The notes below the pieces were generated by a model that saw nothing but the letters and a program-made list of their open reading frames with translations, did no database searches and had not been told where the DNA came from. 64,000 nucleotides of DNA from Stylophora pistillata. Taxonomy: Eukaryota. How positions within the stretch are numbered: position 1 is the first letter of the stretch; every line of letters starts with the position of its first letter. Made by a program: the position numbers and the translations under genes. The stretch spans positions 691,572-755,571 of the forward strand of contig NW_019217817.1 in assembly GCF_002571385.2 (NCBI RefSeq), read 5' to 3'. This document shows, one piece after another, positions 37,648-41,355 of this stretch.

Positions 37648-38168
37648 GTTAGATTACCGACAACACTAACTACATCAGTAATGATTGTTTTTCAGTCTAC
37701 TCATTACGAAATTATTCCTTTGTTGGTATTTTGCAGCTCTTTAGCGCCGCTAGTCTGCCACTTAGGTCTCTTATTCTCCATTTAGGCGTAAATTATACTG
37801 TTTGCAAAATAGGTGTTGTCACTGGTAACAAAAACTGAAATTTTTTGCGGTAATTTTCACCTTTTCACTTTTTAAATTCTCGTTTTCTTTTCCGCTAATG
37901 ATGTGAGCTCTGTCAGCACTATGTAAAATTGATGATGATGAGTTTTAATGCCCGTTTCCTATTGTTAAACTGGTTTAAAAATTTATTTTCAGTTCTGCAC
38001 CATCTTTATCACACTGCCTTCGCTTTCGATTTTTAACGGTAGTTATTTTAAACAACAAACATATGAAATACATATATATGAACTGCGGTTATGAAACGTA
38101 TATGTGCACGATCCTTCGCAGTAAAGCACTATTTAAGCAATAGTGAAAATCAGACCTGAAAAAAATTC

Positions 38169-38241
38169 AGGCCTGTACGGGATTCGAACCACTGACCTCT
38201 GCGATACTAGTGCAGCGCTCTACCAATTGAGCTAACAAGCC
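38169..38241 (-). tRNA. tRNA-Thr(AGT)-like module, probably not a translational tRNA
   Basis: 73 nt; acceptor GGCTTGT/ACAGGCC, D-stem GCTC/GAGC, loop CT-AGT-AT, TTCGAAT; T-stem has two mismatches. Confidence 0.5.
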
Positions 38242-38413
38242 AACTGGGAGCAGGCCATCAAATTAATTCGACATAAACCCGTAGATGATAAATCAAACAA
38301 CAAACATATGAAATACATATATATGAACTGCGGTTATGAAACGTATATGTGCACGATCCTTCGCAGTAAAGCACTATTTAAGCAATAGTGAAAATCAGAC
38401 CTGAAAAAAATTC

Positions 38414-38486
38414 AGGCCTGTACGGGATTCGAACCACTGACCTCTGCGATACTAGTGCAGCGCTCTACCAATTGAGCTAACAAGCC
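38414..38486 (-). tRNA. tRNA-Thr(AGT)-like module
   Basis: Repeat copy of 38169-38241. Confidence 0.5.
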
Positions 38487-38658
38487 AACTGGGAGCAGGC
38501 CATCAAATTAATTCGACATAAACCCGTAGATGATAAATCAAACAACAAACATATGAAATACATATATATGAACTGCGGTTATGAAACGTATATGTGCACG
38601 ATCCTTCGCAGTAAAGCACTATTTAAGCAATAGTGAAAATCAGACCTGAAAAAAATTC

Positions 38659-38731
38659 AGGCCTGTACGGGATTCGAACCACTGACCTCTGCGATACTAG
38701 TGCAGCGCTCTACCAATTGAGCTAACAAGCC
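38659..38731 (-). tRNA. tRNA-Thr(AGT)-like module
   Basis: Repeat copy. Confidence 0.5.
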
Positions 38732-38903
38732 AACTGGGAGCAGGCCATCAAATTAATTCGACATAAACCCGTAGATGATAAATCAAACAACAAACATATG
38801 AAATACATATATATGAACTGCGGTTATGAAACGTATATGTGCACGATCCTTCGCAGTAAAGCACTATTTAAGCAATAGTGAAAATCAGACCTGAAAAAAA
38901 TTC

Positions 38904-38976
38904 AGGCCTGTACGGGATTCGAACCACTGACCTCTGCGATACTAGTGCAGCGCTCTACCAATTGAGCTAACAAGCC
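38904..38976 (-). tRNA. tRNA-Thr(AGT)-like module
   Basis: Repeat copy. Confidence 0.5.
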
Positions 38977-39148
38977 AACTGGGAGCAGGCCATCAAATTA
39001 ATTCGACATAAACCCGTAGATGATAAATCAAACAACAAACATATGAAATACATATATATGAACTGCGGTTATGAAACGTATATGTGCACGATCCTTCGCA
39101 GTAAAGCACTATTTAAGCAATAGTGAAAATCAGACCTGAAAAAAATTC

Positions 39149-39221
39149 AGGCCTGTACGGGATTCGAACCACTGACCTCTGCGATACTAGTGCAGCGCTC
39201 TACCAATTGAGCTAACAAGCC
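39149..39221 (-). tRNA. tRNA-Thr(AGT)-like module
   Basis: Repeat copy. Confidence 0.5.
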
Positions 39222-39641
39222 AACTGGGAGCAGGCCATCAAATTAATTCGACATAAACCCGTAGATGATAAATCAAACAACAAACATATGAAATACATAT
39301 ATATGAACTGCGGTTATGAAACGTATATGTGCACGATCCTTCGCAGTAAAGCACTATTTAAGCAATAGTGAAAATCAGACCTGAAAAAAATTCAGGCCTG
39401 TACGGGATTCGAACCACTGACCTCTGCGATACTAGTGCAGCGCTTTCAGACCTGAAAAAAATCAGGCCTGAATTTTTTTCAGGTCTGATTTTCACTATTG
39501 CTTAAATAGTGCTTTACTGCGAAGGATCGTGCACATATACGTTTCATAACCGCAGTTCATATATATGTATTTCATATGTTTGTTGTTTGATTTATCATCT
39601 ACGGGTTTATGTCGAATTAATTTGATGGCCTGCTCCCAGTT

Positions 39642-39714
39642 GGCTTGTTAGCTCAATTGGTAGAGCGCTGCACTAGTATCGCAGAGGTCAGTGGTTCGAA
39701 TCCCGTACAGGCCT
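39642..39714 (+). tRNA. tRNA-Thr(AGT)-like module
   Basis: Repeat copy in the inverted arm, followed by a T7 run. Confidence 0.5.
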
Positions 39715-39886
39715 GAATTTTTTTCAGGTCTGATTTTCACTATTGCTTAAATAGTGCTTTACTGCGAAGGATCGTGCACATATACGTTTCATAACCGCAG
39801 TTCATATATATGTATTTCATATGTTTGTTGTTTGATTTATCATCTACGGGTTTATGTCGAATTAATTTGATGGCCTGCTCCCAGTT

Positions 39887-39959
39887 GGCTTGTTAGCTCA
39901 ATTGGTAGAGCGCTGCACTAGTATCGCAGAGGTCAGTGGTTCGAATCCCGTACAGGCCT
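39887..39959 (+). tRNA. tRNA-Thr(AGT)-like module
   Basis: Repeat copy. Confidence 0.5.
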
Positions 39960-40131
39960 GAATTTTTTTCAGGTCTGATTTTCACTATTGCTTAAATAGT
40001 GCTTTACTACGAAGGATCGTGCACATATACGTTTCATAACCGCAGTTCATATATATGTATTTCATATGTTTGTTGTTTGATTTATCATCTACGGGTTTAT
40101 GTCGAATTAATTTGATGGCCTGCTCCCAGTT

Positions 40132-40204
40132 GGCTTGTTAGCTCAATTGGTAGAGCGCTGCACTAGTATCGCAGAGGTCAGTGGTTCGAATCCCGTACAG
40201 GCCT
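40132..40204 (+). tRNA. tRNA-Thr(AGT)-like module
   Basis: Repeat copy. Confidence 0.5.
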
Positions 40205-41355
40205 GAATTTTTTTCAGGTCTGATTTTCACTATTGCTTAAATAGTGCTTTACTGCGAAGGATCGTGCACATATACGTTAAGTTATTTTAAGGCTGTTAGT
40301 CCCAGCATGTTGTAAGACGTTTGACATCATTTGTAATAACCTTTACATCAAGATAATTTGGTCGACACAGATCATAAGGTTTATACTTTTTAAGCTCTTG
40401 CCAGAAGACACATTTGAAACAGAAAATGATAGCAAATCGAAAGTGGTCCTAAACCGGAAACGGAAATTTCAAATTTTCTTTCCTGTGAACAGGTAAAATT
40501 TAAGTCACGCTGTCGACTTTAAGAATTCAGAAACATCAGCCGGACAAGAACAAGATGGTTTTTTCTTAACATTTATTTCCAACTTATCTCTCAGATCAAA
40601 GAAAGAATTTTCAAGCTGGTCAGCTACTTGGATTTGAGAGTGCTGGGAAAGATGTGAGCGACGGTTGACTGTTCCATGAAACCGCGTTCTTATACTTCAA
40701 GAGATAACGTTTAAATGATTTAATTTTTAAGTTTAGCGGTGTAGGATCCATCAGGCGTCGCTTCCTCCCTGAAGACAGATTCAGTGGAGAAGCAGTGAGG
40801 GGTCACGTGATCTTTCTGACCATCCAACTCGTAAAAACGTACTATAAAGCCTTTGTGTGTTTGCATGTTTGCCGGATAATATTTTCCTTCCTCAATTTTT
40901 ATCAAGTTTGTGAAGAAGAAGTTGCAAGATTTTCTTTCGTGCAATGTTTTTTCCATTAGAAACAATTTTACTCCAAAACCATTCAACCGAGCAGGTAGTT
41001 GTTGTTTGAGATAATGTATTTGAAACCACAAAAAGAGCACATGTTTATTCATATCATCGGCAGTTCTGAAAGGATTCAAAGAATGTATTAACTCATGCAC
41101 GACAAAGCGGGACTTCAGTCGAAGCCATGAATACAAATCTGTGAGGAATTACATATTGGTTTTTTACCTCTGAGCTTCTCAGGACCCCTCAGAGTTTTCC
41201 GAATAGTGTGTGGCGTGTTTACACACGTTCTACTCTTAGTTTAGAACATGAAACAGATGATCAAGCTTTGATTTGGCCCGCTTCAAACGGCTACAGCGAA
41301 CTTCGACGAATGAGGAAAATAACCTGGCAAGATTTGCACTAAGTGAGGAGAATCG

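What the first reader, a model, noticed from the sequence alone, without database searches (positions are those of the whole stretch)
38041..40290. tRNA-mimic concatemer inserted as one event: candidate retrozyme-like element with a tRNA module in place of a ribozyme
Seen: about nine near-identical 245-bp units, each with a 73-nt tRNA-Thr(AGT)-like cloverleaf, form two inverted arms with 3' ends pointing outward. The block is bracketed by an 11-bp duplication (AGTTATTTTAA), and the two ends fall at different points of the unit (circular permutation). Ordinary tRNA gene arrays and satellites have no TSD, and ordinary SINEs insert as monomers with a simple tail. Known: animal non-LTR retrozymes are short tandem units with hammerheads that yield circular RNAs and are thought to use PLE enzymes. 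Inference: this block is the product of rolling-circle reverse transcription of a ~245-nt circular or multimeric RNA. I see no hammerhead core in the unit, so the tRNA fold could supply the Pol III promoter and/or RNase P/Z cut sites that monomerise the RNA.
Basis: partly seen in the sequence, partly recalled or inferred. Interest (0 to 1): 0.92.

Follow-up and report, generated by a model that had tools for sequence, protein, structure and literature searches.

The report
tRNA-carrying tandem retroelement, Penelope-style insertion
This block is one recent insertion of a very abundant, ribozyme-free coral mobile element built of 245-base units that each carry a tRNA-like module; its geometry matches in detail how Penelope-like retrotransposon enzymes insert DNA, which explains the odd ends without needing a circular RNA.

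Summary
Nine 245-bp units (8 whole tRNA-Thr(AGT)-like modules) lie in two head-to-head arms, flanked by an 11-bp duplication. The two outer ends fall at different unit positions.

It is not a one-off. The unit sits at about 45 assembled loci at 99.9% identity, and read depth suggests thousands of copies. Across 39 loci:
- 42 of 55 3' ends fall in two narrow sites, u141-147 and u189-198, while 5' ends are scattered.
- All 12 adjacent arm pairs are head-to-head.
- 11 of 12 resolved head-to-head insertions have 11-15 bp AT-rich TSDs.
- Each of those uses one end of each type.
- Both inferred nick sites share a G/A-T-T motif.

This matches the published Penelope-like element (PLE) signature: both strands primed, two internal RT start sites, and a one-sided "tail".

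No hammerhead or other ribozyme is present. A T7 Pol III terminator right after each tRNA module argues against Pol III making the template. Mosaic arrays argue against copying from a monomer circle. RNA-seq signal can be explained by under 1% DNA carry-over, so expression is not shown. The helper PLE was not identified.

This scan reached the same general reading earlier on other pieces of this genome. I found no published description.

The parts
38041..38051 (.). Left copy of the 11-bp target-site duplication (AGTTATTTTAA)
   Evidence: The last 2 nt could equally belong to the element.
38052..39444 (-). Left arm: 5.7 units with tRNA sense on the minus strand. The outer (3') end is at unit position u192, so this arm carries the 45-nt 'tail' u148-u192. 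The inner end is at u23.
   Evidence: tRNA modules lie at 38169-38241, 38414-38486, 38659-38731, 38904-38976 and 39149-39221.
39445..39462 (-). Inner junction: 1 nt, then a 17-nt snap-back piece (u92 to u76, minus sense). With the start of the right arm it forms a palindrome at the unit's own hairpin (u67-76 / u82-91).
   Evidence: (I10, I14).
39463..40278 (+). Right arm: 3.3 units with tRNA sense on the plus strand, from u67 to the outer (3') end at u147, without the tail. One unit carries the variant u123 G>A.
   Evidence: tRNA modules lie at 39642-39714, 39887-39959 and 40132-40204.
40279..40279 (.). One extra base (A) between the element's end and the TSD
40280..40290 (.). Right copy of the 11-bp target-site duplication
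39887..39959 (+). Example of the tRNA-like module (u1-u73). The A box (u8-19) and B box (u52-62) match the Pol III consensus. The T stem has two mismatched pairs.
   Evidence: alignment; reading of the sequence
39953..39978 (+). Hairpin made of the tRNA 3' strand and the segment after the T7 run (u67-76 pairs with u82-91; one G.U pair forms only in the sense RNA). The run of seven T (u77-83) is a Pol III terminator signal.
40034..40078 (+). The 'tail' segment (u148-u192) that lies between the two 3'-end sites of the family
22039..22337 (.). Older, diverged member of the same family: two short head-to-head arms and a 13-bp TSD with 1 mismatch. One end lies at the site-1 equivalent, the other carries a tail of about 47 nt.
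43276..43374 (+). 5'-truncated fragment of the family without a tRNA module (81% identity to u89-u185)

Best explanation
The block is a single, recent insertion of a high-copy, non-coding, non-autonomous retroelement. It was most likely mobilised in trans by the reverse transcriptase/GIY-YIG endonuclease of a Penelope-like element (PLE).

Inferred steps:
1. A multi-unit RNA in tRNA sense is bound by the enzyme. It is probably a transcript of an existing array; which polymerase makes it is unknown.
2. The target is nicked on both strands 11-15 bp apart, at AT-rich sites followed by G/A-T-T.
3. Each 3'-OH primes cDNA synthesis at one of two fixed internal sites of the RNA (about u144-147 and u189-194).
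4. The two cDNAs run for variable distances. They are joined 5'-to-5' by microhomology, filler or snap-back at a palindrome.

The result is two head-to-head arms of tandem units. The 3' ends point outward, a 45-48 nt 'tail' sits on one arm only, and the insert is flanked by a TSD.

Shown here: the anatomy and its statistics across loci. Inferred: that RNA is the intermediate, that a PLE is the enzyme, and the order of steps.

The tRNA-like module is kept unchanged across subfamilies, so it probably matters to the element. Its role is unknown. It is unlikely to be the promoter of the template RNA.
For: Family: the unit is found at about 45 loci (191 or more matches) at about 100% identity. There are 65 substitutions in 59 kb, or 0.11%.

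Ends: 24 of 55 resolved 3' ends lie at u141-147 and 18 at u189-198 (P = 1e-37). Only 2 of 39 5' ends lie in those windows.

Orientation: all 12 directly adjacent arm pairs are minus-then-plus.

TSDs: 11 of the 12 resolved young head-to-head loci have exact 11-15 bp TSDs. The TSDs are 78% AT against 61-64% background.

End pairing: every one of the 11, and the old copy at 22039-22337, combines one site-1 end with one site-2 end. That is about 5e-4 if the two choices were independent.

Nick sites: the triplet after the inferred nick is G-T-T or A-T-T in 12 of 22 cases, on both strands (background 4.9%, P = 7e-11).

Inner junctions: they differ at every locus, with 0-3 nt microhomology, 1-19 nt filler, or a short snap-back at a palindrome.

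Literature:
- PLE insertions are partial tandems, often with an adjacent inverted 5'-truncated copy and a 30-40 bp tail at one end only (PMC8557442).
- Head-to-head is the commonest form, with palindromes at the inverted junction, 8-10 bp TSDs, a 31-bp tail, and pLTRs sufficient in trans (PMC3846280).
- A purified PLE protein cleaves and extends both strands, starts RT at two adjacent internal sites not homologous to the target (the tail lies between them), prefers A-T-T in AT-rich DNA, and does not need its hammerhead (PMC11167929).
- Non-autonomous PLE derivatives with multicopy head-to-tail insertions are known, for example MRC1.

This genome: it holds at least 1,590 GIY-YIG candidate sites. 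Eight close pairs are minus-then-plus.
Against: - No helper was identified. The one abundant PLE family I could read (canonical, C-terminal GIY-YIG, with a hammerhead core) shares no sequence with the unit. No GIY-YIG hit lies within 15 kb of an array.
- An RNA intermediate is not shown. The RNA-seq depth on the unit follows the DNA depth profile and would be explained by 0.5-0.8% DNA carry-over.
- TSDs of 11-15 bp and a tail of 45-48 nt are somewhat longer than the published PLE values (8-10 bp; 30-40 bp).
- Single-arm arrays with both junctions resolved show no clear TSD.
- Many arrays abut assembly gaps or have an N at the inversion point.
Confidence: 0.72

Rival explanations
1. One reading: the enzymes are PLE-type, but the template is a ~245-nt circular RNA copied by rolling-circle reverse transcription. 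The tRNA module supplies the Pol III promoter and/or RNase P/Z cuts that make unit-length RNA, which is then circularised.
For: Arrays of up to about 17 nearly identical units. Hammerhead retrozymes in a related coral are tandem 170-400 bp repeats that give circRNAs (PMC7229834). RNA-seq reads run across the unit-to-unit boundary (272 and 105 'goes back 245' joints).
Against: The permuted ends are the family's two fixed 3'-end sites, so they need no circle. Some arrays are mosaics: L032 has one unit with six linked variants between consensus units, L042 and L057 have variants in two adjacent units only, and u123 G>A sits in a single unit of three arrays, this one included. There is no pile-up of read ends at the tRNA borders or elsewhere (table 6). 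The T7 terminator right after each module would stop Pol III after about 80 nt. RNase P and Z leave a 5'-phosphate and a 3'-OH, which is not what the RtcB-type ligase used for retrozymes joins (general knowledge). The unit-to-unit joints are equally expected from DNA or from linear multimers. Caveat: inner units may have been collapsed to consensus by the assembler.
Confidence: 0.15
2. A tRNA-derived SINE mobilised by a LINE, with the inversions made by twin priming as described for L1.
For: A tRNA-like head with intact A and B boxes. TSDs of 11-15 bp and 5' truncation are also typical of LINE-type target-primed reverse transcription. Twin priming gives head-to-head arms.
Against: There is no A-rich or simple-repeat tail. 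The 3' ends lie at two fixed internal sites with a strict one-of-each rule. Insertions are multimers rather than monomers. The Pol III terminator lies inside the unit rather than at its end. The nick motif is the same on both strands. All TSD-bearing insertions are inverted, whereas twin priming affects only a minority of L1 insertions (general knowledge).
Confidence: 0.06
3. A DNA-level element: a foldback-type transposon whose long inverted arms are tandem repeats, or reinsertion of extrachromosomal satellite circles.
For: Inverted arms made of tandem repeats plus a TSD recall foldback elements.
Against: The two termini are never the same and show no terminal inverted repeat. Arm lengths and inner junctions differ at every locus. 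One class of end is fixed and the other scattered, which is the mark of primed copying from a template with 5' truncation.
Confidence: 0.04
4. An ordinary tRNA gene cluster or satellite, or an assembly artefact.
For: Many arrays abut gaps, and some inversion points carry an N. Unit counts cannot be verified.
Against: The unit is dispersed at about 45 loci with independent TSDs. The right junction is present in another sample's contig. The T stem is defective in every copy.
Confidence: 0.01

Closest known systems
Non-autonomous derivatives of Penelope-like elements (for example MRC1 of Chlamydomonas; pLTR-only cassettes mobilised in trans in Adineta vaga)
   Same: Non-coding. Inserted as multicopy head-to-tail units, with an inverted 5'-truncated arm, a one-sided tail, a short TSD and 5' truncation.
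   Different: Carries a tRNA-like module with a Pol III terminator in every unit. No sequence similarity to an autonomous PLE was found. The unit is much shorter (245 bp) and the copy number very high.
Metazoan non-LTR retrozymes (hammerhead-bearing tandem repeats, for example in Acropora millepora; PMC7229834)
   Same: Tandem units of 170-400 bp, low GC (40%), non-coding, dispersed, TSDs longer than 4 bp, and suspected dependence on PLEs.
   Different: No hammerhead or any other Rfam ribozyme. No circRNA is shown. For this family the insertion anatomy links it to PLE-type enzymes; the retrozyme review I read says those repeats show no motif that points to a helper (PMC7761336).
tRNA-derived SINEs
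   Same: A tRNA-like module with A and B boxes; non-autonomous retroposition.
   Different: The terminator lies directly after the tRNA part. Insertions are multimers and have no A-rich or LINE-like tail. The arms are head-to-head with two fixed 3' sites.
L1 twin priming
   Same: Both target 3'-OH ends prime cDNA synthesis. This gives an inversion with 5'-to-5' joining by microhomology, inside a TSD.
   Different: Here both primings start at defined internal sites of the template, and inversion is the rule rather than the exception.

Membership tests
PLE-type insertion (element mobilised by a Penelope-like RT/GIY-YIG enzyme) | Partial or multiple tandem copies with variable 5' truncation and fixed 3' ends | tested here: met
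   42 of 55 3' ends fall in two narrow windows; 5' ends are scattered.
PLE-type insertion (element mobilised by a Penelope-like RT/GIY-YIG enzyme) | Adjacent inverted 5'-truncated copy, head-to-head | tested here: met
   12 of 12 adjacent arm pairs are minus-then-plus. Palindromic snap-back at several junctions, including this window's.
PLE-type insertion (element mobilised by a Penelope-like RT/GIY-YIG enzyme) | Short extension ('tail') at one end only, reflecting two RT start sites | tested here: met
   All 11 TSD-bearing loci and the old copy pair one end at about u144-147 with one at about u189-194. The tail is 45-48 nt, against 30-40 in the literature.
PLE-type insertion (element mobilised by a Penelope-like RT/GIY-YIG enzyme) | Short TSD at AT-rich targets, with both strands nicked | tested here: met
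   TSDs of 11-15 bp, 78% AT. G/A-T-T follows 12 of 22 inferred nicks, on both strands.
PLE-type insertion (element mobilised by a Penelope-like RT/GIY-YIG enzyme) | 3'-end similarity to an autonomous PLE of the same genome (the usual mark of a non-autonomous partner) | tested here: inconclusive
   One PLE family was compared and gave no similarity. Other families could not be fetched.
Retrozyme (metazoan, non-LTR) | Self-cleaving hammerhead ribozyme in each unit | tested here: not met
   An Rfam scan at E<=1 and a whole-window scan at gathering score find only tRNA. There is no hammerhead core motif in 38041-40290 on either strand.
Retrozyme (metazoan, non-LTR) | Tandem non-coding units of about 170-400 bp with low GC | tested here: met
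   245 bp, 40% GC.
Retrozyme (metazoan, non-LTR) | Abundant unit-length circular RNA | tested here: inconclusive
   Reads cross the unit boundary, but depth follows the DNA profile and there are no discrete ends. The libraries cannot tell circles from multimers or DNA.
tRNA-derived SINE | Pol III transcript from the internal promoter covers the whole element; monomeric insertion with an A-rich or LINE-derived tail | tested here: not met
   The T7 run lies at u77-83, directly after the module. Insertions are multimers that end at u144-147 or u189-194.
Functional tRNA-Thr gene array | Canonical cloverleaf | tested here: not met
   Two mismatched pairs in the T stem and one in the anticodon stem in every copy. 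The score is 48.9 bits.
Foldback / TIR DNA transposon | Identical inverted termini | tested here: not met
   The termini always differ, at u192 and u144-147.

The most novel reading that the evidence does not exclude
The invariant tRNA-like module does the job that the hammerhead does in retrozymes. Host tRNA-processing enzymes would cut multimeric transcripts at the module, and the pieces would be ligated into unit circles that serve as PLE templates. That would be a new, protein-processed class of circular-RNA retroelement. A milder version: the module is a TFIIIC/Pol III landing pad that keeps the arrays transcriptionally open.
Probability: 0.1. Interest if true: 0.85.

Novelty: new variant of a known kind. 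Interest (0 to 1): 0.62.

Why it matters
PLE retrotransposition is still poorly understood. Its signature features (both strands primed, internal RT start sites, a one-sided tail) were reproduced in vitro only in 2024, and with one enzyme.

This family supplies hundreds of near-identical, very young natural insertions of a 245-nt substrate. From them the rules can be read directly:
- two start sites 45-48 nt apart
- one of each per insertion
- an 11-15 bp stagger between the nicks
- a shared nick motif

It also shows that a tandem, retrozyme-like passenger can thrive without any ribozyme. That bears on the open question of what hammerheads do for retrozymes and PLEs.

For coral genomics, the family makes up a sizeable share of the genome that is collapsed in assemblies and recently active. 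It breaks assemblies and places hairpin-forming repeats near genes.

Tried and rejected
1. Ribozymes. The Rfam E<=1 scan of the block, the whole-window scan and a hammerhead core motif search found none in the block.

2. Helper search.
- Three loci of the most uniform GIY-YIG family were fetched. It is a canonical C-terminal GIY-YIG PLE with a hammerhead core and one fixed 3' end. It has no similarity to the unit or to the older subfamily. Its RT region reads N.
Loci were also not cut out.
- No GIY-YIG hit lies closer than about 15 kb to an array.

3. Expression.
- Raw RNA reads give depths of 400-2,100 on the unit and 0 on most of the flank.
- The unit/flank ratio in a DNA run (8,000-72,000) matches that in an RNA contig run (7,500-107,000).
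- The RNA/DNA depth ratio along the unit stays within about twofold.
- 0.5-0.8% DNA carry-over would therefore be enough. I do not claim expression.

4. Rolling-circle test by within-array variants. Mosaic arrays exist. However, variants crowd into the outermost unit (37 of 65), which may mean the assembler collapsed the inner units. The test is only suggestive.

5. Covariation in the spacer. Only about 5 diverged copies are held, with one fully compensatory pair in the u97-u115 hairpin. That is too thin to claim.

6. MFE folding. Both strands fold better than shuffles (z = -2.8 and -3.5). The cloverleaf is not the MFE structure in the context of the whole unit. This is not decisive.

It was redone from coordinates.

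Full report
WHAT IS THERE

- Window 38050-39444 is 5.7 copies of a 245-bp unit and 39463-40278 is 3.3 copies, at 100% and 99% identity. The two arrays are inverted relative to each other.
- ARAGORN calls eight 73-nt tRNA-Thr(AGT) modules, five on the minus strand and then three on the plus strand.
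- Rfam's tRNA model scores them at 48.9 bits, with one non-standard pair in the anticodon stem and two in the T stem.
- The 11-mer AGTTATTTTAA brackets the block at 38041-38051 and 40280-40290.
- In 2,608 random position pairs of the same window, no abutting direct repeat reached 10 nt.
- I number the unit from tRNA position 1 (u1 = 39642). The left arm ends at u192 and the right arm at u147.

IT IS A FAMILY, NOT A SINGLE ODDITY

- A 490-nt probe finds at least 191 matches at about 45 loci of the 397-Mb assembly, nearly all at 99-100% identity.
- Over 59 kb of arrays from 39 loci there are 65 substitutions, or 0.11%.
- In a DNA run from another sample, summed contig depth on the unit is 8,000-72,000 times that of the single-copy flank. 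This is a crude measure. It points to thousands of units or more, most of them collapsed in the assembly.
- Older, diverged members lie in the same window at 22039-22337 and 43276-43374.
- The scan's earlier notes on other pieces of this genome (s1-773148, s1-776266, s1-775560) describe the same family and the same general reading. I treated them as leads and tested the claims on my own loci.

ANATOMY ACROSS LOCI

I fetched 38 loci with flanks and mapped every arm onto the unit.
- 3' ends. In tRNA-sense orientation, 24 of 55 resolved 3' ends lie at u141-147 and 18 at u189-198 (P about 1e-37). Most of the other 13 lie at u160-181, where divergence near the end shortens the exact match.
- 5' ends. 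They are spread over the whole unit, with 2 of 39 in those windows.
- Orientation. All 12 directly adjacent arm pairs are minus-then-plus, that is head-to-head with 3' ends outward.
- TSDs. Twelve young head-to-head insertions have both outer junctions resolved. Eleven have exact TSDs of 11-15 bp. The twelfth, L056, has none.
- One end of each type. In all eleven, and in the old copy at 22039-22337, one outer end is of the u144-147 type and the other of the u189-194 type, never two of a kind. So one arm carries an extra 45-48 nt.
- Target sites. TSDs are 78% AT against 61-64% around them. Reconstructing the empty sites, the three bases after the inferred nick are G-T-T (9 cases) or A-T-T (3 cases) in 12 of 22 nicks, spread over both strands (background 4.9%, P = 7e-11).
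- Inner junctions. They differ at every locus and show 0-3 nt of microhomology or 1-19 nt of filler. Several carry a short snap-back piece at a palindrome. In this window that is 17 nt at the unit's own u67-u92 hairpin. In L052 and L066 it is at a C-A-T-A-T-G palindrome.

These are therefore independent insertion events made by one mechanism.

MATCH TO PUBLISHED PLE BEHAVIOUR

- Craig et al. 2021 describe PLE insertions as 5'-truncated partial tandems, often with an adjacent inverted 5'-truncated copy and a 30-40 bp 'tail' at one end only. They also describe non-autonomous derivatives with multicopy head-to-tail insertions.
- Arkhipova et al. 2013 report for Adineta vaga that head-to-head is the commonest arrangement. 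They report palindromes at the inverted junction, 8-10 bp TSDs, a 31-bp tail on one of the inverted pLTRs, and mobilisation in trans of sequences that carry only pLTRs.
- Frangieh et al. 2024 showed with a purified PLE protein that both target strands are cleaved and extended. RT starts at two adjacent internal sites that are not homologous to the target, and the tail is the sequence between them. A-T-T in AT-rich DNA is the preferred cut site. A multi-copy RNA is the presumed template, and the hammerhead is dispensable in vitro.
- Each of these points has its counterpart here. The differences are quantitative: TSDs of 11-15 bp and a tail of 45-48 nt.
- The genome is rich in PLEs, with at least 1,590 GIY-YIG candidate sites. 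Eight close pairs of such sites are minus-then-plus. The only plus-then-minus neighbours I could inspect are separated by an N run.

The 'circular permutation' of the ends is the tail, not evidence for a circle.

A monomer circle predicts arrays whose units are all alike. Several arrays are mosaics instead:
- L032 has one unit with six linked variants between consensus units.
- L042 and L057 have variants in two adjacent units only.
- The variant u123 G>A sits in one unit each of three arrays, including the right arm of this window.

There is a caveat. 37 of the 65 substitutions lie in the outermost 245 nt of the arms (22% of the bases, P = 2e-9). That may mean the assembler has polished inner units to consensus.

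On the Pol III idea:
- The A box (u8-19) and B box (u52-62) are intact.
- A run of seven T follows the module by 3 nt.
- No insertion ends there, and every arm reads through several such runs.
- So the template is unlikely to be a Pol III transcript started at the module.

On RNase P/Z monomerisation: no pile-up of read starts or ends was found anywhere on the unit in two raw RNA-seq runs (table 6). The inserted copies contain uncut modules.

NO RIBOZYME

Rfam at E<=1 over the block finds only tRNA, and so does the whole-window scan at gathering score. The hammerhead core motif has no match inside the block on either strand.

RNA

Two raw RNA-seq runs from different studies cover the unit at depths of about 400-2,100 and 170-970. 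Both mate directions are about equal. There are 272 and 105 reads running from one unit into the next, while most of the flank has zero depth.

This is not proof of transcription:
- The unit/flank ratio in an RNA contig run (7,500-107,000) is the same as in a DNA run (8,000-72,000).
- The RNA/DNA depth ratio along the unit stays within about twofold.
- DNA making up 0.5-0.8% of the letters read would give the observed depth, and fewer than 0.2 reads on the flank.

The same call shows a 2,786-nt DNA contig from another sample that runs from the right flank 25 nt into the array at single-copy depth. So the right junction is real and shared.

THE tRNA-LIKE MODULE

Among the few diverged copies I hold, the spacer differs by about 8-15%. 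The module, its defective T stem included, is identical. Depth at 95% or more identity is 5-9 times higher over the module than over the rest of the unit.

So the whole 73 nt, not just the two promoter boxes, is being kept. I cannot say why. Candidates are:
- a protein- or RT-recognition fold in the template RNA
- a TFIIIC/Pol III binding site that affects chromatin or transcription of the arrays
- processing signals

The hairpin that pairs the module's 3' strand with the segment after the T run has a G.U pair that forms only in the sense RNA. The u97-u115 hairpin just upstream of the first 3'-end site shows one compensatory A.T to G.C change between subfamilies. Both are hints of RNA-level function and no more.

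HELPER

The helper was not found.
- The most uniform GIY-YIG family is a canonical PLE with a hammerhead core in its 3' region. All three copies share the same fixed 3' end.
- It shares nothing with the unit.
- Other PLE families could not be fetched.
- The literature reports Neptune, Naiad and Hydra clades in a related coral, and Naiads lack hammerheads. That makes a Naiad a reasonable guess for a hammerhead-free passenger, but it is only a guess.

VERDICT

It is wrong or unsupported about the circle, the Pol III template and RNase P/Z.

The element is a new variant of a known kind: a non-autonomous, PLE-type tandem retroelement that carries a tRNA-like module instead of a ribozyme. I found no published description in five literature searches. 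That library lacks most subscription journals and Repbase, so an existing entry there cannot be excluded.

Noticed in passing
window 53500-53620 and 21800-21880: Short near-perfect palindromes (two ~60-nt arms, head-to-head). Each arm carries a minimal hammerhead-like core (C-U-G-A-N-G-A, stem, C-G-A-A-A-C) that scores below Rfam's gathering score. They look like head-to-head 3' fragments of a hammerhead-bearing PLE or retrozyme family, different from the PLE family in L069-L071.
   Followed up: partly
arrays in L031-L068 and window 38050-40278: Substitutions crowd into the outermost (3'-most) 245 nt of each arm: 37 of 65 in 22% of the bases (P = 2e-9). Either the assembler collapsed inner units to consensus, or copying is error-prone near the RT start. 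Unexplained.
   Followed up: partly
L046:2650-3020: A short head-to-head copy whose two flanks are exact reverse complements of each other for at least 40 nt. This is an inverted duplication that includes flanking DNA, or an assembly foldback.
   Followed up: no
L065:1418, 3655, 3940, 4211: The 13-nt target sequence of this insertion recurs twice more downstream at a spacing of about 270-285 nt. The element landed inside another tandem repeat.
   Followed up: no
window 40069 and 40205-40206 (unit u183-191 and u75-76): Length polymorphism across the family: one extra T-T-G in the tail in about a quarter of the reads, and +/-1 A before the T7 run in about a quarter (table 4). The first lies next to the second 3'-end site.
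   Followed up: no
window 40209 (unit u78), run X21: 171 RNA-seq reads share one upstream sequence (agreement 0.93) that joins the unit inside the hairpin/T-run. This may be one well-expressed locus holding a 5'-truncated copy with a snap-back start.
   Followed up: no
L053:4100-4420: An array of young 245-type units whose last unit switches, after the tRNA module, to the older subfamily's spacer and ends at the site-1 equivalent. This is a chimeric insertion, which suggests template switching or recombination between subfamilies.
   Followed up: no
L069:1850-2885, L070:1807-2661, L071:2296-3349: The RT-coding parts of the three PLE copies read N (withheld or gaps). The PLE proteins could therefore not be classified to clade.
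   Followed up: no
window 43340-43400: After the tRNA-less fragment of the family, the ~25-nt tail motif is repeated in tandem once more with small changes.
   Followed up: no
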